A stretch of 64,000 nt of DNA from Lytechinus pictus (taxonomy: Eukaryota). A model generated the notes under the pieces. It was not told the origin of the DNA. It ran no database searches and was given only the letters and a program-made list of their open reading frames with translations. Positions 206 to 42,242 of the stretch are shown in pieces. The position numbers were made by a program, and so were the translations under genes. The stretch is from NCBI RefSeq assembly GCF_037042905.1, contig NC_087260.1, positions 24,242,001 through 24,306,000 of the forward strand, read 5' to 3'. Within the stretch, counting starts at the first letter, position 1; each line of letters starts with the position of its first letter.

Positions 206-3200
206 TGTCTGTTCATTGTTCAGCCCATAATTCATCAAATCTGATTTAGGCACAATTCCTTCAGTAGGCCTACTAGAACCCATTCATGTCACATTTTAAG
301 TGGTTTAATCAGAGAACATGTTCTCTAGTTGTGAGAGGAGTCAGAGAGGTGAGAGAATCTCCATCTTTCAGATGTAATGGGATTGTCTTGAGCAGGTTAG
401 GTCTCTTAACACCCTCTTTCTCCTGCTTCGACTCCGCCCATCATTTCCCTGGTGCTTCATCATCCCCTTTTCTCAGCTCTTTAATGTGATTTTGTGAAGA
501 GAGCATCTGTACAAACAACCTCTAGGGATGTGGGATGAGAGAGTGAAATGCAGTAGAATATTCAGTATGTGGGACTGTAGTGAGGTGGATTTCTACCTGT
601 TTCTATTCGATTAGGCCAGCTTTCTCCTTTCCTCTTGATAACATGTAGCAGCCATTGTGCACCTGTCCTCAATTTCAACCTAGCTAGAGGGTCTGCTTTG
701 AAAAGTGGTTTAACACTTTAACTGTCAATGTTTCATCTTGAAACTGCCAGCAAAAGGCATTTCATCATACTGAGGGATTGAAAGAGTTAACATTCAAACT
801 CGTATTCAAAATGAAGGTGAATCATTGAAATAATATGAGGGTTTTTTCCCCTTGATAGTTTTCACCAGGACTTTCTTTCTTATAGAAGTGTCACATGCAA
901 TAACTTTATTTATTTTCTAGAAGATACCTTTTGCACGTTCACAATTTTGCTCTTTCACATATTCTTAGGGATTATTTGTTTCAAAATCCATTTGATTAGG
1001 CCCAATACTGTATAAATATTGTATTATAATACATAGGTTATTTCTTTATAATAGTACCCTGTAGTTACGAATATTTTCTGTTATAATTATATAAATATTG
1101 AAAACTAGACTCGAGGTACGATTACTTTTATGAAAATGGGAAATTTCATTTGGGCCTCCACCATGTGGGCCAGTGTGGTGATGATATTGAAGGTCGGTTT
1201 ATGTACCACATCTTTATTTACTTGTACTTTGTAGGACTATACTTACAATTTATTTGTGCAGTAGCAGAGTTTTAGTTCTTCACATATCCCAGATTTGATC
1301 CTCTTTAACAATCATTTTACAAGATTAACTAGGCTAGATCCCAGGCTCTAGTTATTATACAGTTTTCTTGCAATTAAGTAGAGCAGGACTTTTCTCATCT
1401 TTGTAAAGCTTCGTATTCATACTGTCCAGACTAAAATGTTATATTTTTCTCTCCTGCGATGGAATTGTTCAATCCTAAGTCTGATTCTCCCCAGCGTGTG
1501 AATCCCTTTATATCAGACTTTGGATTAGAAGAATTCTGGATTAGTCTGGAATGTGATGTTTTTTGCTAACTTGTTTACGCCATTTGAAATTTTAAATCCC
1601 ACATTTTATTTATTTCCCCCTTATTTCTTCTTTGTAAGTAAAAGTTTTCATGTTTGATGGATCAGACTCTTCTTCATTTTTTTTCTGTAAGTGGATTTAA
1701 ACGAAAATATAATTTAAGGATGTTGAATATGCTTGCAAATTCAGGGGACCTGCAAAATTAGAGGGGAGGGGGTCAACGCCCATCCTTTACCCTCAATCTA
1801 GTCTGTGAGCACAGACTAAATTACATATATATATGTCTAGGGTGGACAATAGACTACTATGTGTTTATCAGCAATCCAGGCTCTTGCATAGTAGTTTGTT
1901 AAAAATTATTGTATTCTCTATATATGCTTTTAGGTATTTTAAAAGAAATTGACAATTTCATATTCCCTAGATAGTTTAAGCATGCAAAGCCTTCAAATTC
2001 TATTAGATTTTGAATGAATGGGAATGAATAGCATCCCTAAGAAAGTTTTAACCAATTATTATGACTCATTTACCCCCTTACTTAGATCATGGACCTACAT
2101 GCTTAGATACTGCAATTCTGATAAATGAAATCTAGTTTTCTCCGTCTAGAGCTAAATGGTAAAGAAAATAATGAAGAGAAATGCCCAAGAATTAGTTGCT
2201 TCCTCTCTTTGGTCTTAATGACCGTTTAGGAGAAAGATACACCCTCAAATGGACTATTTGATAAGATTTAACCCCTCATTTAATCATCATAAATTTTGGT
2301 CAGCTACCCCCATTTTTCATTGTTTTCTTCAGTTGATCCTCCTCCTCCACAGATCCTGAACTCTTGGTCTGATTATCAGCTTTAAGGTTGTGCGATCCCC
2401 CAAATTCCTTCTCATTGTCCGGCTTTGTCCGCTGTCATCAAGTGATTGCATCCCAAGCTGAAAATGAGACTTTGTCAAACCAAACTCACCTTCTCAGCTA
2501 CCATTGTTGCCAATTTGTTGTGTCTCTCCTCCCCTGGCATACATAGTGATTTCCTTTGAAGCCCCGTAGCTCTATTGTCATTGAAGGCCCTTCTAAAGTT
2601 CCAAATAAACTTCCAACCACAATTCCAAATTTCTTCTCAAACCATTAAGGATTGATAAAAAGAGTGTCACAATTGGCAAATCCCTGTTTATTTCTTTGAT
2701 GAAACTCTCTCCATATCCCCCTTCACACTGCTAAGATTCATCGTATAATAAAGTAAAGAAACTACTGAAATCATGCTACTTTTGTAGAGCTAATCTAATA
2801 TGAATGCACTGTAGTTTTCTTTTCAGCATGAGTTTTAGGATAGAATACTTGACCTATTTCCTTTGCTTTACAAGGTCTAGTTTGAGGAATTTTAGGCTTT
2901 TTCGTTTCAACTGACCCATCACAGGAATTTTTGAAATTGTAATTTGGTCTGAGTGATCCATTGGATGTCAGCCTAAGCTTTGACCTTTTACATTTATATT
3001 TTTTAGCGATTTAGTACAATTTTTTTAATGGTGTGAATGGTCTATTTCATGATTCTTTCTCTGATGCTACTATGTAGTAAATCCCTACGAAATAGACTGA
3101 TGAATGTATGAGACACAAAAAAAGCATCCAACAAAACTTATCTTCTGTTTTTGTACTGCTATTGTGTCCCCTCCTTTCTTTCAGATGTAGTCTAGTTGCC

Positions 3201-3859
3201 CAGTCTTGGATATTTTTAGGTTTTTATGTGTTTTTGTGGAAAAACTAGGCAGGCTTACATGGTGGCTGTTGATGAGTTATCCTGTATTGTCATATTGATG
3301 AAGGTTTTGTTGGTAGAAGTGACACATAATTTCATTTATTGTAGAAAGGTGAATGATGAAGGTTCATATTGAGAATGGCTTCAGCTGTCCATTATTAGAA
3401 TACTTTTGTCTGAATTTTACTACAAAGTATAGTAAATCCATAATCACATTGAGAAATGAAATAAATGTGAGAATGAATGTTAAGGATTAAGAGAGTGATT
3501 GCACTTGTCAGCATTACAAGTGGCCAGGTTAACAAGAGATAAAGACCTGTTAGATTTTACTTCACACCTGGGACCTACATAGGGTAGTCAGCCTAAGTCA
3601 GATGTCATGTATGTGAACAAAGTAGAAGTTTCCGTGACAGTATGCTGTTGTTCTGACAAGTTACTCAGTCCTCACGATTTACTAAAAGAAACTTTTTCTT
3701 CTTGGCATGGAATAGTTATGCATGGTCTCGGGGTAGACCAGAAGTGGGAGAATTTCTTCTCGAAGAACAAGATTATAAATTCATGCATGGACATGCTACA
3801 CAGGACATTGATACAGGGTACTATGTCTATGTATGGCACGCCCATAGGGAAACAATTAT

Positions 3860-4400
3860 ATATATATTTCACTTGAAAAAAATATGTTTCTCTTCTACTA
3901 AACCATTTCACTCAAAGAAATTTATATTTCACTTTTCAAAAAATATATTTCACTTTTATAAAAAAAATATATTTCACTTTTCAAAAAAATATATTTCACT
4001 TTTCAAAAAAAATATATTTCACTTTTCAAAAAAATATATTTCACTTTTCAAAAAAATATATTTCACTTTTCAAAAAAAAATATATTTCACTTTTCCAAAA
4101 AATATATTTCACTTTTCAAAAAAAAAATATTTCACTTTTCAAAAAAATATATTTCACTTTTCAAAAAAATATATTTCACTTTTCAAAAAAATATATTTCA
4201 CTTTTCAAAAAAATATATTTCACTTTTCAAAAAAATATATATTTCACTTTTCAAAAAAATATATATTTCACTTTTCAAAAAAAATATATTTCACTTTTCA
4301 AAAAAATATATTTCACTTTTCAAAAAAATATATTTCACTTTTCAAAAAATAATATATTTCACTTTTCCAAAAAAAATATGTTTCACTTTTGAAAAGAATC
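3860..4400 (+). repeat. ~21-24-bp subterminal tandem array (aaaaaaatatatttcacttttc), left arm
   Basis: About 20 units differing mainly in A-run length. Confidence 0.95.
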
Positions 4401-4499
4401 ATTTCACTTGTTACATTTTAATTTTGAAAGAAAACAAATCCTTTCACTTTTGTTGGATATCACATGCGGCTGCCGTATTAGACCGTACGTAAAATTCAT

Positions 4500-4851
4500 C
4501 TATCTATCTATCTACCTACATGATATATCTATCTATCTCTCTGCCTAATATATATCTATCTGTTTAAATCTATCTATCTATCCATCTATCTGTCTGTCTA
4601 TTTATCTATCTATCTCTCGAACTATTTATTTTTTTATCTATCTAACAATTATCTGTTTAAATATGTCTGTCTATCTATCTATCTGTCTGTCTCTTTATCT
4701 ATCTATCTATCTATCTAATATCTATTTATTTATTTTAATATGTCTATATCTGTTTATTTATCATTCAATCTATCTATCTATCTAATGATTTATCCGGCTG
4801 TTTAAATGTCTGTATATCTGTCTTAATTTCTATCTATCTGCCTATTTATCT

Positions 4852-4895
<44 letters not shown>

Positions 4896-5588
4896 ATATC
4901 TATCTATCTATCTATCTTATAAGTCTATCTGTTCAAAATATGTATGTCTACCTTTTATCTTTCAATCTAATATCTATTGATCTGTGCAAATAATCATGTC
5001 TGTTTATTTATCTGTTTATCTATTTAATATCTATCTATTAAATCTGTTAAATATGTTATTCTATCTGTCTATCTATCAATAAATATATCAATCTATTTTC
5101 TCTCTATCTATATATCTATCCATCTGTTTATCTATCTGCGTATGTATCTATGTATCTATCTGTCTCTGAATCTATGTGTATATCAAATATAATATCATAA
5201 TCACCGTTATCATCATCATCATATTTGCCATCAATCATCAGCATCATCCTCCTCATCGTATTTTTTATCATCAATCAATATCTATCTAATGTCTATCTGT
5301 CTATCTATCTAATACCTATTTATCTGTTTATATCTATCTATATATTAATCCCTTTTATTAATATATATCTATCTTCTATTGATCAATCCACCTATCATTT
5401 ATCTCTCCATCCATCGATCTATCTATCTATTTATCTATCTTTCTTATACGTATCTGTTTAAATATGTATGTCTATCTGTCTGTCTATTTATCTTTCATAC
5501 TTATATCCACTCATTTGTATAAATAATTATGTCTGTTTATCTACGACCAACCACCTAATTCGTCCGCACGACGAATTAAAATCTAGTT
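4500..5588 (+). mobile_element. (TCTA)n-rich 3' fragment of a Helentron/HINE-like element inside the left arm
   Basis: Ends in accacc-TAATTCGTC-cgcac-GACGAATTA-aaat-CTAG-tt (5550-5588), nearly identical to the 3' end of the Helentron at 57767-57805. Confidence 0.75.
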
Positions 5589-7281
5589 TCTTTTTCACTT
5601 GTTACATTTTAAATCTGAGAGAAAACAAATCCTTTCACTTTTGTTGGATAACACATACGACGGCGGCTGCCGTATTAGACTGTACGTAAAATTCATTCCT
5701 CACGTAAAAATCCATTCCTCTCGCTACGTAAAACATTTCACTCTTGTTGCAAAATTCATTTCACTCAATTGCAAAAAATACGTTCCTCTTTTTTCTCGGC
5801 CTGTAGGCGGCGCGCTTCATTGTTGGCGGGAAATAGAGATGGTTGCAAAATTTTCGCTGTGCTGAGGGGAGAAATCATGAAAGCGGTTGCAACTCACAAA
5901 ATGACAAGGATATGGGGATATCAGCGAACGCAATTACGTCACTTTCCCACGTGCACGAGAATGCACCACGAGGTGGGCCCATGAACACAAAACGTAAAGT
6001 ATGATTTTATCGCTGATTATGCACAATAGCCAGTGCAATCAGCCGTTGCATTCTGCCCTACGATCAATCACTAACCTTAGCACGGTCTGGCTATACGTTT
6101 TGTAGGCATGGGGCATGAATACTTTATACATACACTATCTACAGAGCTGAATGGTCAAGGTAAGTGTTGAAATTTCCCTTTTCTCCATTCCGTCTGTCTT
6201 TTACTTCATTGACATACGATGATCGTAATGATTGATTAAATGAAGCTTACAAAGAGCTACAATTCACTGGTCAACTCGCTTGTACCTGCACTGCAAAACC
6301 AAATTCTCTCCAGTTTGTCCGAGACATGAATGGGGGGTTTTCCAATGCTACTCTCAGAACGGGCAGTACTTCACCGTCTTTTGAACAGACATGAAAAGTG
6401 AGTATACGGGACTGAAGTTAAGTGATGACGTCATCGCTCAACCCTAAAAATTTGGTGTTAGCCGAGAATGTCCACCGAAAGCGATGACGTCTTCACCCAT
6501 TCAGTCATGTATGCTTTACCGCCTATGTCTGGTTTGAAGAAGCACTGCCCGTGACAAAATGGTGAGAATTTGGTTTTGCAACGGAAGTACAAGCGAGTTG
6601 ACCAGTGAAATGTAGCCTTTTGTAAGCTTCATTTCATCAATCATCGCGATTATCGTATGTCAATGAAGTAAAAGACAGACGGAATGGAGAAAAGGGAAAT
6701 TTCAACACCTTGTCCATTTAGCTCCGGAGATAGTGTAGTGCCATGCGTGGAGCTATTCATGCTTCATATCATGCCTACAAAACGTTAGTGATTGATCGTA
6801 GGGCAGAATGCAACGGCTGATTGCACTGGCTATTGTGCATAATCAGCAATAAAATCAAACTTTATGTTTTGTGTTCATGGGCCCACCTCGTGGTGTATAT
6901 TCTCGGGCACGCGTGGGAAAGTGTTGTAATTGGGTTCGCTGGTATTCCCATATCCTTGTCATTTTGTGTGTTGCAACCGGATTCATGATTTCTCCCCTCA
7001 GCAGAGCGAAAATTTTGCAACCATCTCTGTTACCTCGTCCTGACAACAATGATGTGCGCCGCCTACAGGCCGAAAAAAAAGAGGAACGTATTTTTTTGCA
7101 ATTGAGTGAAATGAATTTTGCAACAAGAGTGAAATGTTTTACGTAGCGAGAGGAATGGATTTTTACGTGAGGAATGAATTTTACGTACAGTCTAATACGG
7201 CAGCCGCCGTCGTATGTGTTATCCAACAAAAGTGAAAGGATTTGTTTTCTCTCAGATTTAAAATGTAACAAGTGAAAAAGA

Positions 7282-8400
7282 AACAAGATTTTAATTCGTC
7301 GTGCGGACGAATTAGGTGGTCGGTCGTAGATAAACAGACATAATTATTTATACAAATGAGTGGATATAAGTATGAAAGATAAATAGACAGACAGATAGAC
7401 ATACATATTTAAACAGATACGTATAAGAAAGATAGATAAATAGATAGATAGATCGATGGATGGAGAGATAAATGATAGGTGGATTGATCAATAGAAGATA
7501 GATATATATTAATAAAAGGGATTAATATATAGATAGATATAAACAGATAAATAGGTATTAGATAGATAGACAGATAGACATTAGATAGATATTGATTGAT
7601 GATAAAAAATACGATGAGGAGGATGATGCTGATGATTGATGGCAAATATGATGATGATGATAACGGTGATTATGATATTATATTTGATATACACATAGAT
7701 TCAGAGACAGATAGATACATAGATACATACGCAGATAGATAAACAGATGGATAGATATATAGATAGAGAGAAAATAGATTGATATATTTATTGATAGATA
7801 GACAGATAGAATAACATATTTAACAGATTTAATAGATAGATATTAAATAGATAAACAGATAAATAAACAGACATGATTATTTGCACAGATCAATAGATAT
7901 TAGATTGAAAGATAAAAGGTAGACATACATATTTNNNNNNNNNNNNNNNNNNNNNNNNNNNNNNNNNNNNNNNNNNNNNNNNNNNNNNNNNNNNNNNNNN
8001 NNNNNNNNNNNNNNNNNNNNNNNNNNNNNNNNNNNNNNNNNNNNNNNNNNNNNNNNNNNNNNNNNNNTAGAAATTAAGACAGATATACAGACATTTAAAC
8101 AGCCGGATAAATCATTAGATAGATAGATAGATTGAATGATAAATAAACAGATATAGACATATTAAAATAAATAAATAGATATTAGATAGATAGATAGATA
8201 GATAAAGAGACAGACAGATAGATAGATAGACAGACATATTTAAACAGATAATTGTTAGATAGATAGAAAAATAAATAGTTCGAGAGATAGATAGATAAAT
8301 AGACAGACAGATAGATGGATAGATAGATAGATTTAAACAGATAGATATATATTAGGCAGAGAGATAGATAGATATATCATGTAGGTAGATAGATAGATAG
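7282..8400 (-). mobile_element. Mirror copy of the Helentron-like (TAGA)n insert in the right arm
   Basis: Reverse complement of 4500-5588 with few substitutions; contains assembly gap 7935-8067. Confidence 0.75.
7935..8067. other. Assembly gap
   Basis: N run; its mirror position is 4833-4935, which contains a pure (TATC)n tract. Confidence 1.
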
Positions 8401-8499
8401 ATGAATTTTACGTACGGTCTAATACGGCAGCCGCATGTGATATCCAACAAAAGTGAAAGGATTTGTTTTCTTTCAAAATTAAAATGTAACAAGTGAAAT

Positions 8500-9063
8500 G
8501 ATTCTTTTCAAAAGTGAAACATATTTTTTTTGGAAAAGTGAAATATATTATTTTTTAAAAAGTGAAATATATTTTTTTGAAAAGTGAAATATATTTTTTT
8601 GAAAAGTGAAATATATTTTTTTGAAAAGTGAAATATATTTTTTTTGAAAAGTGAAATATATTTTTTTGAAAAGTGAAATATGTATTTTTTTGAAAAGTGA
8701 AATATATTTTTTTGAAAAGTGAAATATATATTTTTTTGAAAAGTGAAATATATTTTTTTGAAAAGTGAAATATATTTTTTTGAAAAGTGAAATATATTTT
8801 TTTTGAAAAGTGAAATATATTTTTTGGAAAAGTGAAATATATTTTTTTTTGAAAAGTGAAATATATTTTTTTGAAAAGTGAAATATATTTTTTTGAAAAG
8901 TGAAATATATTTTTTTTGAAAAGTGAAATATATTTTTTTGAAAAGTGAAATATATTTTTTTTATAAAAGTGAAATATATTTTTTTGAAAAGTGAAATATA
9001 AATTTCTTTGAGTGAAATGGTTTAGTAGAAGAGAAACATATTTTTTTCAAGTGAAATATATAT
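8500..9063 (-). repeat. Subterminal tandem array, right arm
   Basis: (gaaaagtgaaatatattttttt)n, reverse complement of 3860-4400. Confidence 0.95.
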
Positions 9064-9561
9064 TTAATTGATTCCCTATAAGCGTGCCATATCTATGGGA
9101 TCATTCAATTAGTTCAGGCAGCAGCATGTATTGTACAGCCATGAATACAGCTATATACTAGGGTCGTTAGTTCTCATTCATCCTTCCAATAGGGGCCCTT
9201 TTATTTGCCCCTGTTCTCTATTGACTGCCCCCTGAATGCCACCCTACCCCCTTTGTTGTGCTATCCTTCAAAGGACTTTCTCCCCATTCCAGAGATTAGT
9301 GTCAGTCCCTTTCACAATATCCAAACGGCTTTTCACAATGTAAAATTCATATGATTTTTATTTGAGAGAATAGTTTGCATTTTTTGTATTTTGGTATACA
9401 AAAGCAGCAACAAATTGTTTTTTAAGGACCCTTGATCTTGATTAAGCTCTTGTATTACTGGAAATTAGTAAAAAGTATGTTAAAACACTCCTTATCTTTT
9501 TCTTTTTTCCTTTTTCTTTTTCTCTAATGAAACTTGAGGGCAGAATTTAAAAATAAAACCT

Positions 9562-9730
9562 GGTGGGTGTTATATGAAAGTTGTCAGCACTGACTTAATT
9601 GTCAGTGCTGACAATTTCAGTGAAATCATTTGTTTTGATTGGCTGAAAGGCACTGGCCTCTGACTGTTACTATGGTAACTGTCGGAGAAAGACAACTTGT
9701 CAGTAATGACAACTTTCATGAAACGGTCCC
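9562..9730. mobile_element. Short Harbinger-like MITE
   Basis: Imperfect TIR atgaaagttgtca / tgacaactttcat, internal palindrome ttgtcagcactgac..gtcagtgctgacaa, central GATTGGCTG. Confidence 0.6.
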
Positions 9731-12700
9731 TTTATAAACGTAATAACTTGTTTAAGGGAGAATTAAATAGAATTAAAAAAACATCTGATTAAATAGACTA
9801 GAAAGTTCAGTCTAATTGGAAGAGGCAAATTGGGCACATGGCGGGCCTTGCCCCAATGTTGGATTTTTGTTGATGTGCCACTACTTGTGATCTCAGGGAG
9901 ACGGATGATTCCCCCATTGTAGATTTATTACAAGAGAATATCCTTTGTGCCAGCACGTGCAGTTTTGAAACGGCTTCTCTGCCATGCATGTCTTGCCCTC
10001 TGATATACATACCATGCAGAACAGAACATTCTGACTCCCGCTCAAAAAACGTTCTTGTATACATCTATTTTCAACGATGAAATGTACTCACACTTAAGTG
10101 GTACGAATTCCTTTTCCCTTTCATTTCTTCTGAAAGCGTCCCTCACAGCAGTTGTCCGGGCCCTTCTTGAATGGTCCTGAGACACGTACCGAACGGCTGA
10201 CTCACCTTTCAAATCTTTCTCATGCTGACAAAGACTTACAAATGGGATGTAACTACTGCTTCTTTATTGAAACTGTGTCTTTTCGTCAAGAGTATGTTAA
10301 ATATTGTTTAATCAGCAGTATTGTCACCCTGTTCTGCAGTCATTGATGTCAGTGATACCAGGATATTAGGTTATTGGTGATACTGACAGTGATCGCTGAT
10401 CAGACTGTGAGACATTTGTCCTGGAATAATCTCAAATTTGAATAGGCCTACATAATGTACATGTACCTTATAAGGGGGGGGGGGAACTTGATAGCATTTG
10501 TAATTATAACAAAACATTTCTCATCAAAATTCAAAATGGCAAAAATCTTATCATTTGAAGATAAATAGGCTCTATTACTAGATTCTACAGGTCGCCATTT
10601 TTAAAGTACACCTCTTACAAGATATCTCTTTATATTTGAGGTATATCTACAGTGTATGTGTACTATTAAAGTAGGCCTTAGATTATTTGGTTCATCAACA
10701 GTTATTTTTCTAATCTATATTTTAGTTGTGCAATCAATATGTCCGTAAAGCTGCCCATCACTTGTTGCTCAATATTCAAACATTTCAAAGAACTGTCTGA
10801 AATTGATATCTACCATCAAAGTGATCATAACATAGGCCTATACATACATATTGGATTGAAAATGTTAAATTATATATTTTAACAGTGGACTGTTATTTAA
10901 TAGACCTATCATGCTGAAATGAATCAAGGTTTGTTTGTAGGATTGGAACACGCAACCCTCTGAATGAAAAACAAGAGTCGAACCACAAGCGCTATAGGAT
11001 ACTTCCAGTTATTATCAATCTGTTGGGGATTTTGTTTTTAGGGATAAATTGAAGTCGGACTCTGATGTTGAAAGCTTGCTAACAAATTAACTGTAATATG
11101 CATAGTGGGTCAATACTGTAGCTACGCTTAAGTAGAAATGTAAATCAAAGCAAAGGCTTCTGGTAAGAATTGAATTCAACTTACATGTTATTCTATCTCT
11201 TCCTCAAGGAGGGGGAGGGGGGCAGTGAGGGACTCGAGTGTTTTGTTTAGTGTGTGGTGTACCAGTCTGCTGTTTATTATGCTTGATTTTCAAAGCAAAC
11301 TTTAGTCTTTATTTGCATCTTGGCCTTAAAAATTTGCTGGAATGTATTGCTAATTTAGGGGCTTTGTTGCTTACAAGCACAGTACTTGAATGTACAGGGG
11401 GGGAGGGAAGAGGTTGGCTGCTGTGTGTAGTGAGAAAATGTGTCCCTGGGGACAAAAATCTGTCCCCAGAAGATCATTAGCGAATTGCGATATTTAAAAA
11501 TAAATGAAGAAACAAAACAACCTATAGTGGAATTTTGAATAAGATGGTACTTGATGATTGGATATGCAAAAACTATTCAGTGCAGTAAGGAGTAACCACA
11601 TTTTTTTTGTTGGGCAAAACAATTTCGGTGAGAAGGAGGTAAGTGAGTGTCCATCTTGTTTTTGCACTGTTGTTGGACCTCTGTGTTGTTATCTCCATGG
11701 CCTCACCAAGGGGGACCGTATTTATCCCACGTGTCGCCACTTTTCTTTGCACCAAGGTGATGAAGTTTGTGTATGGTAATAAGATGGAAGTGGAATTCGA
11801 GGTAGAGCGTGAAAGAAAGTGAGAGAGAGAGAGAGAGGAAGAGAAAGTAAGATGGAAGAATAAGAATGGAGAGATAAAGAGGCTTAAATATGTTACAAAA
11901 TGCATCCATTATTCAAACACTTGAGACTTGAATTATATGACTCATCATAGGTTGTAATCAAGTATGGAAGGCCACGGGTGAATCTTCAGTATTCAGTGAT
12001 ACATTTGTATGTAAAAGATATGTATTCAGAAATAGAAAATCATGCTTAGTTAGCCCAAGGAGTTCCTTGGTTAGCCAGAAGTCCACTCCATCAATTATTG
12101 GTGAGCCCCATAATTTTTAGAATTTACTCTGCATCATTTTATTGGTACTGCAGTGAAATTAATTATGAAGACACAAGATTACATTTCTGAAAGACAAAAG
12201 ATTATGCCATGAACTTTCAAACCCTAACCGATTATTCTGTCAATTACTACCAGTCATACTTTTTAAATAGAAAAAAAAAAAAATGGGATTTTTGCGCAAA
12301 AGATAAAAAGAGAAGAATAGAATTTGAATTTTAAGATCATTTTTGATTATGCATATATGTTAAAATGTTAACATTTTATAGACTACATCATTCGGGAAAA
12401 CTGAGAAAGATGTACATGTAGTTAAAAATAGGGACACCACAAATAACATGTATAGATGTTTTAGAGCATCTCTTTTTTTAAATAGAATTATCGATAGGCC
12501 CTTTTTAAATTCACAAATCTGTGTGAAACGCAGTGATTTGAATGGATGAATGATTAGAGGTAGTAGTGCAAAAGGTCTTGAATGTTTTCATAAATCCTAA
12601 TTAACATGTTTGTACAGCTTCAATGCCTAAGTCATTGAGCCAATAACTTACTCAATTGAAATCTCAATGATTCAGAGATATGGTTACCTCAAGTCGAACT

Positions 12701-42095: not shown

Positions 42096-42242
42096 NNNNN
42101 NNNNNNNNNNNNNNNNNNNNNNNNNNNNNNNNNNNNNNNNNNNNNNNNNNNNNNNNNNNNNNNNNNNNNNNNNNNNNNNNNNNNNNNNNNNNNNNNNNNN
42201 NNNNNNNNNNNNNNNNNNNNNNNNNNNNNNNNNNNNNNNNNN
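42096..42242. other. Assembly gap
   Basis: N run followed by (ATG)n-like low-complexity sequence. Confidence 1.

What the first reader, a model, noticed from the sequence alone, without database searches (positions are those of the whole stretch)
3832..9091. 5.26-kb foldback element: 2.6-kb arms, 41-bp loop, 6-bp TSD and IS3EU-type ends
Seen: the element is an inverted repeat almost end to end (arms 3832-6438 and 6480-9091, loop 6439-6479). It has subterminal ~22-bp tandem arrays, TATGGCACGC termini and a TCTATG target duplication, so it moved as one unit. Known: Drosophila FB and sea-urchin TU foldbacks have tandem-repeat outer domains but, as I recall, 8-9-bp TSDs; TAY..RTA ends with a 6-bp TSD are the signature I recall for the little-studied IS3EU superfamily. 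Inference: a foldback class mobilised in trans by an IS3EU-type transposase, which I do not know to be described. A palindrome of this size with so short a spacer is normally unstable.
Basis: partly seen in the sequence, partly recalled or inferred. Interest (0 to 1): 0.72.

Follow-up and report, generated by a model that had tools for sequence, protein, structure and literature searches.

The report
Foldback transposon with IS3EU-type ends
This is a real, recently mobile 5.3-kb jumping gene that is almost a mirror image of itself and encodes no protein; its ends and 6-base insertion footprint fit the little-studied IS3EU/GingerRoot transposons, so it is a well-documented new example of known kinds of element, not a new kind.

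Summary
Window 3832-9091 is an inverted repeat almost end to end. It has TATGGCACGC/GCGTGCCATA tips, 22-bp subterminal arrays (21.5 and 22.5 units) and a TCTATG duplication.

It is one copy of a family with 148 termini (about 74 copies) in this genome. All 15 complete copies examined carry a perfect 6-bp TSD, each of different sequence. A contig from a related species runs from the left flank, through one TCTATG, straight into the right flank: an empty site.

No copy examined encodes a transposase; the large ORFs are nested LINE reverse transcriptases. TA..TA ends plus 6-bp TSDs are the published signature of IS3EU/GingerRoot. The link to such a transposase is inferred only.

- The N gap lies in an ATCT microsatellite block, its flanks are collinear, and a gap-free sister copy has the same structure.
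- The near-perfect arms (99-100% over about 1.9 kb) are separated by about 1.3 kb of 71-92% symmetry, not 41 bp.
- This arm pattern is shared by three transposed copies.
- The centre is inverted relative to the ends in other subfamilies.

This scan has already reported IS3EU-like foldbacks elsewhere in this genome (s1-324912, s1-306904).

The parts
3826..3831 (.). left copy of the 6-bp target site duplication TCTATG
   Evidence: The empty site in run X9 has a single TCTATG.
3832..3922 (+). left terminus: tip TATGGCACGCCC ('CC' type) and about 90 nt holding four degenerate TTTCAC motifs
   Evidence: Contigs of organism B break exactly at 3831/3832.
3923..4409 (+). left subterminal array, 21.5 units of 22 bp (TATATTTCACTTTTCAAAAAAA)
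   Evidence: (D2)
4402..4499 (+). unit A, a ~100-nt direct repeat partner of A'
   Evidence: D10, D12
4498..5592 (+). degenerate ATCT-microsatellite block of the left arm
   Evidence: All scored genome matches of 4936-5592 lie inside copies of this family.
5593..5696 (+). unit A' (90-97% identical to A)
   Evidence: D10, D12
5697..6438 (+). left inner domain ('alpha' type). The arm-identity step lies at 5778/5779.
6439..6479 (.). asymmetric centre (loop), flanked by GATGACGTC motifs
6480..7173 (-). right inner domain ('beta' type), about 85-88% identical to alpha, with indels of 39, 16 and 6 nt
7174..7277 (-). unit A' of the right arm
   Evidence: D11, D13
7278..8400 (-). ATCT-block of the right arm (read as AGAT), interrupted by the assembly gap 7935-8067
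   Evidence: (I1, I2)
8401..8498 (-). unit A of the right arm
   Evidence: D11, D13
8491..9000 (-). right subterminal array, 22.5 units of 22 bp
   Evidence: (D1)
9001..9091 (-). right terminus ('TT' type tip). It is right-end type only in the outermost 64 nt or less, then left-arm type.
9092..9097 (.). right copy of the TSD TCTATG

Best explanation
A non-autonomous foldback DNA transposon of a young family, with about 74 copies (148 termini) in this genome. Earlier notes of this scan say the genome is the sea urchin Lytechinus pictus; I did not check that.

Shown:
- It inserted here as one unit and duplicated TCTATG.
- All complete copies examined have 6-bp TSDs.
- It encodes no recognisable protein or RNA.
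- The palindromic form itself has transposed.

Inferred:
- It is cut and inserted in trans by an integrase-like DDE transposase of the IS3EU/GingerRoot superfamily. That enzyme would recognise the TA-ended tips and make cuts staggered by 6 bp in the target.
- The 20-26 subterminal TTTCAC-containing 22-bp units per arm serve as reiterated transposase-binding sites, by analogy with other foldback and subterminal-repeat elements.
- The arms are kept alike by recombination and gene conversion within the element. In the window's subfamily, a left-arm copy replaced the right arm from the inner-domain boundary out to within 64 nt of the tip. Crossing-over between the arms has inverted the centre relative to the ends in different subfamilies.
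For: Family and mobility:
- 148 termini against 0 for the control.
- 15 of 15 perfect 6-bp TSDs of unrelated sequence.
- In run X9, from another species whose flank is ~7% diverged, a contig matches the left flank up to 3831. It then continues with 30 of 30 letters equal to window 9098-9127. This is an empty site with one TCTATG.
- Many contigs of that species break exactly at 3831/3832, and the terminus has summed depth hundreds-fold above the flank.

Non-autonomy:
- No long ORF apart from nested LINE reverse transcriptases.
- No Pfam match and no Rfam match.

Superfamily signature:
- TA..TA ends and TSDs usually of 6 bp for IS3EU and GingerRoot (PMC10045372; PMC6839031).
- IS3-like DDE frames are present in the genome.

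Arm dynamics:
- The inner domain always occurs as one 97-100% copy plus one ~86% copy, so the foldback predates the amplification.
- Arms are 97-100% identical over the outer 1.9 kb and 83-92% inside, in both WIN and the gap-free L020. A third such copy sits at C6:21438639-21443909.
- The alpha domain is next to the CC end in WIN, L020 and L005, and on the other side in ten other copies. The loop aligns only in reverse orientation between WIN and L015.
- The right tip keeps its diagnostic bases only in the outermost 64 nt or less.
Against: - No autonomous copy with these ends was found.
- None of the 47 scored IS3-like DDE matches lies within 10 kb of a listed terminus. Only 47 of 915 candidates were scored and only 100 of 148 termini were listed.
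- Superfamily assignment from TSD and end dinucleotides alone is a convention, not proof.
- Binding of a transposase to the 22-bp units is untested.
- The copies examined were chosen for a 100% match to the window's left end, so left-end uniformity is partly a selection effect.
- The inversion reading depends on the CC versus T(C/T) tip polarity. With homogenised arms, an exchange of tips would look the same.
Confidence: 0.65

Rival explanations
1. Same non-autonomous foldback transposon, but mobilised by a transposase outside IS3EU/GingerRoot that also makes 6-bp staggered cuts. Candidates are a Polinton- or Ginger-like integrase, a Dada-type enzyme, or an undescribed superfamily.
For: No transposase was linked to the family. 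Other integrase-like elements also give 4-6-bp TSDs (PMC10045372).
Against: TA..TA ends together with a strict 6-bp TSD are the combination reported for IS3EU/GingerRoot. From my own knowledge, Polintons end AG..CT and Dada elements insert into specific small-RNA genes. The 15 targets here are unrelated sequences.
Confidence: 0.25
2. The palindrome at this locus is an assembly or long-read foldback artefact: one arm was copied in inverted form next to an assembly gap.
For: There is an N gap inside the right arm, flanked by 843 nt and 560 nt that are 100% and 99% identical to the left arm. Foldback artefacts in long reads are documented (PMC12870357, listed).
Against: The same architecture and the same identity step occur in the gap-free copy L020 and in the C6 copy. 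The inner domains differ by about 12-15% with indels, which an artefact would not produce. The right tip has its own diagnostic bases, shared with the right ends of other copies. Both tips are flanked by the TSD, and the empty site joins exactly the two outer flanks.
Confidence: 0.03
3. A member of the classical 8-10-bp-TSD foldback groups: Drosophila FB/Tetris-like Mutator relatives, P-type Galileo, or the sea-urchin TU elements.
For: The modular layout is the same: tandem-repeat outer domain, inner domain, variable middle segment, and nested insertions that are dispersed repeats in their own right. This matches descriptions of FB and Tetris (PMC4079207) and, from my memory, of TU elements.
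Against: The TSD is 6 bp in 15 of 15 copies, not 8-10 bp (Tetris/Mutator) or 7-8 bp (P). No TU sequence was available for comparison.
Confidence: 0.05

Closest known systems
[quoted passage not shown]
   Same: 5'-TA..TA-3' termini, terminal inverted repeats and a 6-bp TSD (PMC10045372, PMC6839031). A derivative with internal tandem repeats has been reported in Hydractinia (PMC11934779).
   Different: Described GingerRoot TIRs are 100-150 bp. Here the inverted repeat takes up nearly the whole 5.3 kb, with 22-bp arrays. No transposase has been linked to this family.
Drosophila foldback elements FB and Tetris
   Same: Long modular TIRs with a tandem-repeat outer domain and an inner domain, a variable non-coding middle, and no autonomous copy found (PMC4079207).
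   Different: Those have 8-10-bp TSDs and are assigned to Mutator. Here the TSD is strictly 6 bp and the ends are TA..TA.
Galileo (P superfamily foldback-like element)
   Same: It shows that foldback architecture arises independently inside ordinary cut-and-paste superfamilies. Its long TIRs carry multiple transposase-binding sites (cited in PMC4079207).
   Different: Different superfamily, TSD and ends. Galileo has autonomous copies.
Sea-urchin TU foldback elements (Liebermann et al. 1983, cited in PMC4079207)
   Same: Same animal group. As I recall the papers: outer-domain tandem repeats, an inner domain, a middle segment, and insertions that are themselves dispersed repeats.
   Different: As I recall, TU elements have 15-bp outer repeats and an 8-bp TSD. 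I had no TU sequence or paper text in hand, so this is untested.

Membership tests
IS3EU/GingerRoot superfamily | 5'-TA ... TA-3' element termini | tested here: met
   TATGGCACGC...GCGTGCCATA in the window and in 15 other copies. Criterion from PMC10045372 and PMC6839031.
IS3EU/GingerRoot superfamily | target site duplication of 6 bp | tested here: met
   15 of 15 perfect 6-bp TSDs. Empty site with a single TCTATG in a related species.
IS3EU/GingerRoot superfamily | encodes, or shares ends with an element that encodes, an IS3/IS481-like DDE transposase | tested here: inconclusive
   No transposase in the 21 copies examined. IS3-HMM matches exist in the genome, the best at C6:7466045 in a 492-aa open frame. 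None of the 47 scored lies within 10 kb of a listed terminus. Their DNA could not be fetched.
Foldback elements (structural class) | very long TIRs that make up most of the element, with a tandem-repeat outer domain and no coding capacity | tested here: met
Mutator-type foldbacks (FB, Tetris) | TSD of 8-10 bp | tested here: not met
   6 bp in 15 of 15 copies. Criterion from PMC4079207.
Sea-urchin TU elements | sequence homology to TU inverted repeats; 8-bp TSD (recalled from memory) | not testable with these tools
   No TU sequence or paper text could be obtained. The recalled 8-bp TSD would not fit.
Polinton/Maverick derivatives | 6-bp TSD with AG..CT termini (termini from my own knowledge) | tested here: not met
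   The TSD length fits (PMC10045372) but the termini are TA..TA.

The most novel reading that the evidence does not exclude
This family would be the first documented foldback lineage of the IS3EU/GingerRoot superfamily. An integrase-like transposase would be moving elements that are near-total palindromes. Between rounds of transposition the arms would be re-homogenised by conversion within the element, and the centre would flip by arm-to-arm crossing-over. That would make it a natural system for studying how such an enzyme and the host tolerate hairpin-prone substrates.
Probability: 0.45. Interest if true: 0.5.

Novelty: new member of a known kind. Interest (0 to 1): 0.4.

Why it matters
IS3EU/GingerRoot is one of the least studied eukaryotic transposon superfamilies, and no transposition mechanism has been tested for it. 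Foldback architecture is so far tied mainly to Mutator- and P-type elements.

This family offers several things:
- It is young and has many copies.
- Its 6-bp TSD rule is strict.
- There is an empty orthologous site in a related species.
- There are clear subfamily isomers: arm homogenisation and an inverted centre.

It is therefore a usable case for asking how foldbacks arise inside another superfamily, and how long inverted repeats are maintained and tolerated. For genome annotation it explains an assembly-hostile 5-kb palindrome with a gap.

Tried and rejected
- Transposase in longer copies. The 883-aa ORF in copy L013 and the 465-aa ORF next to L004 are LINE endonuclease/reverse transcriptases. 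ORFs of the 6.8-kb subtype and of the window copy have no Pfam match.
- The 1.86-kb extra segment of the 6.8-kb subtype as a transposase remnant. It is a separate abundant dispersed repeat, with an independent 87-90% identical family.
- Autonomous partner via shared internal sequence. The inner domain occurs only in this family.
- Autonomous partner via ends. The 20-mer pattern and a divergent right-end query found only this family.
- Autonomous partner via the IS3 HMM. There are 47 scored matches, most in 1100-1500-aa frames that look like LTR polyproteins by size. Some lie in 290-740-aa frames. None is near a family terminus.
- Text of the sea-urchin TU papers could not be found.
I saw nothing for or against Helentron origin. 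All scored matches of that block lie inside this family.
Full report
**1. Observation**

A repeat scan of window 3000-10000 finds inverted-repeat blocks that tile 3832-9091. A BLAST of the left half against the reverse complement of the right half gives two collinear blocks. They are 3832-4832 with 9091-8068, and 4936-6319 with 7934-6553, at 94-95% identity once array indels are counted.

The centre aligns more weakly up to about 6438/6480, around a 41-nt asymmetric stretch, with indels of 39, 16 and 6 nt. The tips are TATGGCACGC and GCGTGCCATA. TCTATG flanks both of them. Tandem Repeats Finder gives 22-bp arrays of 21.5 units (3923-4409) and 22.5 units (8491-9000).

**2. The gap**

The N run at 7935-8067 lies in the right arm. 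It faces 103 nt of ATCT-type microsatellite in the left arm (4833-4935). The sequences on its two sides align to adjacent parts of the left arm (I1 and I2). They also align collinearly to the gap-free sister copy L020, where about 116 nt separate them.

**3. It is a mobile family**

- The terminal 112 nt occurs at 97-100% identity in at least 40 places.
- The pattern TATGGCACGCNNATAGGGAA, with up to one mismatch, occurs 148 times. Its reversed control occurs 0 times.
- I assembled 21 copies from fetched loci. Fifteen have both ends within reach, with sizes of 4.5-7.6 kb.
- All fifteen have a perfect 6-bp duplication, each of a different sequence.
- Paired termini in the pattern list imply sizes from 0.67 kb to about 9 kb, plus a few pairs 23-29 kb apart.

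**4. Empty site**

The left junction, 3200-3925, could be laid.

In run X9 (organism B) the flank differs from the window by about 7%. One contig there matches the left flank up to 3831. It then continues with GGATCATTCAATTAGTTCAGGCAGCAGCAT, which is identical to window 9098-9127, the sequence just after the right TCTATG. This is the unoccupied site with one TCTATG.

In three runs of organism B many contigs start matching exactly at 3831/3832 with different flanks. The terminus also has summed word depth hundreds-fold above the flank. The family is therefore multi-copy in that species too. The tool warns that depth is not a copy number.

**5. No coding capacity**

- The only long ORFs in or next to copies are nested LINE reverse transcriptases.
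- ORFs of the 6.8-kb subtype and of the window copy have no Pfam match.
- Rfam finds nothing in 3000-10000.

**6. Family anatomy**

Each arm has five parts: a ~90-nt tip, the 22-bp array, a ~100-nt unit A, a ~1.1-kb degenerate ATCT block, and a second unit A'. An inner domain follows.

The inner domain occurs only in this family. It always appears as a pair of one 97-100% copy and one ~86% copy. The two inner halves, which I call alpha and beta, are therefore old paralogues, and the foldback predates the amplification.

A 6.8-kb subtype (L015, L007, L019, L011, L014, L017, L018) carries an extra 1.86-kb segment in the right arm. That segment is itself a different dispersed repeat.

The two tips are distinguishable. 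One end reads ...CACGCCC and the other ...CACGCT(C/T), with further diagnostic bases at positions 21, 28 and about 65. The left ends I examined were selected for identity to the window's, so their uniformity is partly a selection effect.

**7. Arm dynamics**

In the window copy the arms are 97-100% identical over the outer ~1.9 kb. Identity drops to 88-95% at 5778/5779 and to ~71% near the centre. The gap-free copy L020 shows the same profile. A third copy, at C6:21438639-21443909, has both arms and the inner domain about 100% identical to the window's. The identity step is therefore inherited, not an artefact of this locus, and the palindromic form itself has transposed recently.

The right arm of the window copy keeps right-end diagnostic bases only in the outermost 64 nt or less, and is left-arm type further in. 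In the 6.8-kb subtype the arms are only 84-89% alike. I read this as a gene-conversion tract that copied the left arm onto the right arm and removed the 1.86-kb insert.

Relative to the tips, alpha lies next to the CC end in WIN, L020 and L005. It lies on the opposite side in ten other copies. The loop region of WIN aligns to L015 only in reverse orientation. This fits crossing-over between the arms that flips the centre. An exchange of tips would look the same.

**8. Stability**

The near-perfect repeat is separated by 1313 nt (I1), and that stretch is only 71-92% symmetric with indels. The abstract of PMC10164571 (listed) states that distance and divergence between inverted repeats reduce their ability to cause rearrangements. 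The element is therefore less hazardous than a 2.6-kb perfect palindrome with a 41-bp spacer would be.

**9. Superfamily**

- Kojima 2023 states that complete IS3EU families always have TA..TA termini and usually 6-bp TSDs, and that GingerRoot shares both features (PMC10045372).
- The GingerRoot paper gives TA..TA ends, mostly 6-bp TSDs and TIRs of 100-150 bp (PMC6839031).
- Mutator-type foldbacks give 8-10 bp (PMC4079207).
- The family here meets the IS3EU end and TSD criteria. It fails the TSD criterion of the classical foldback groups.

The decisive feature, a shared-end autonomous element with an IS3-like DDE transposase, was not found. An IS3 HMM search gives 47 scored matches of 915 candidates, some in open frames of transposase-like size. 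None is within 10 kb of a listed family terminus. A first-reader note (s1-311670) mentions a complete IS3EU-type transposon elsewhere in this genome. I could not locate it or test it.

**10. Mechanism, shown and inferred**

Shown:
- Insertion as a unit with a 6-bp staggered target cut.
- Non-autonomy.
- Recent activity.
- Arm homogenisation and centre inversion between subfamilies.

Inferred:
- Trans-mobilisation by an IS3EU/GingerRoot transposase.
- The 22-bp TTTCAC units acting as reiterated binding sites.

**11. Verdict**

This is a real, well-supported element. It is a new member of known kinds: a foldback non-autonomous transposon with IS3EU/GingerRoot-type ends. The same scan has already reported IS3EU-like foldbacks on other DNA of this genome (s1-324912, s1-306904). 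No held paper links IS3EU with foldback structure. Repbase and Dfam could not be consulted.

The species name Lytechinus pictus comes from earlier notes only, and I did not verify it.

Noticed in passing
L042:2902-5550 (minus strand), inside copy L013 at G000:C10:6942320-6948507: A 5'-truncated LINE with an open 883-aa endonuclease plus reverse-transcriptase frame is nested in one copy of the family.
   Followed up: partly
L044:4327-6188 (the extra 1.86-kb segment of the 6.8-kb subtype): This segment is a separate abundant dispersed repeat, with 8003 first-look candidates. An independent family 87-90% identical to it carries a ~520-nt insertion at query position 1210. Its class is unknown and its ORFs have no Pfam match.
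   Followed up: partly
G000:C8:2120689-2121358: Two family termini face each other only 670 bp apart. This looks like a miniature copy made only of outer domains. The sequence was not fetched.
   Followed up: no
G000:C15:15532191-15545608, G000:C11:9097372-9122425, G000:C11:15351369-15380648 and G000:C21:14854427-14877783: These are clusters or very distant pairs of family termini, 11-29 kb apart. Partial data for C15 and C21 show nested or truncated copies. They could also be composite elements that carry host DNA.
   Followed up: partly
G000:C6:7466045-7466473 and other rows: IS3-HMM matches in open frames of 290-740 aa. These are candidate integrase-like DNA-transposon genes (IS3EU, Ginger or Polinton). 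The sequences were not fetched.
   Followed up: no
window 6421-6438 and 6480-6496: Each side of the 41-nt centre carries a GATGACGTC motif. The left one lies within a near-perfect 18-nt palindrome containing the CRE-like TGACGTCA. Its significance is unknown.
   Followed up: no
window 42096-42242: A second assembly gap in the window, outside the finding.
   Followed up: no
window 3260-3485 and 3654-3717 (left flank): Contigs of the related species skip 224 nt, with 34 other letters in between, and 62 nt of the window's left flank. These are indel differences between the species near the insertion site.
   Followed up: no
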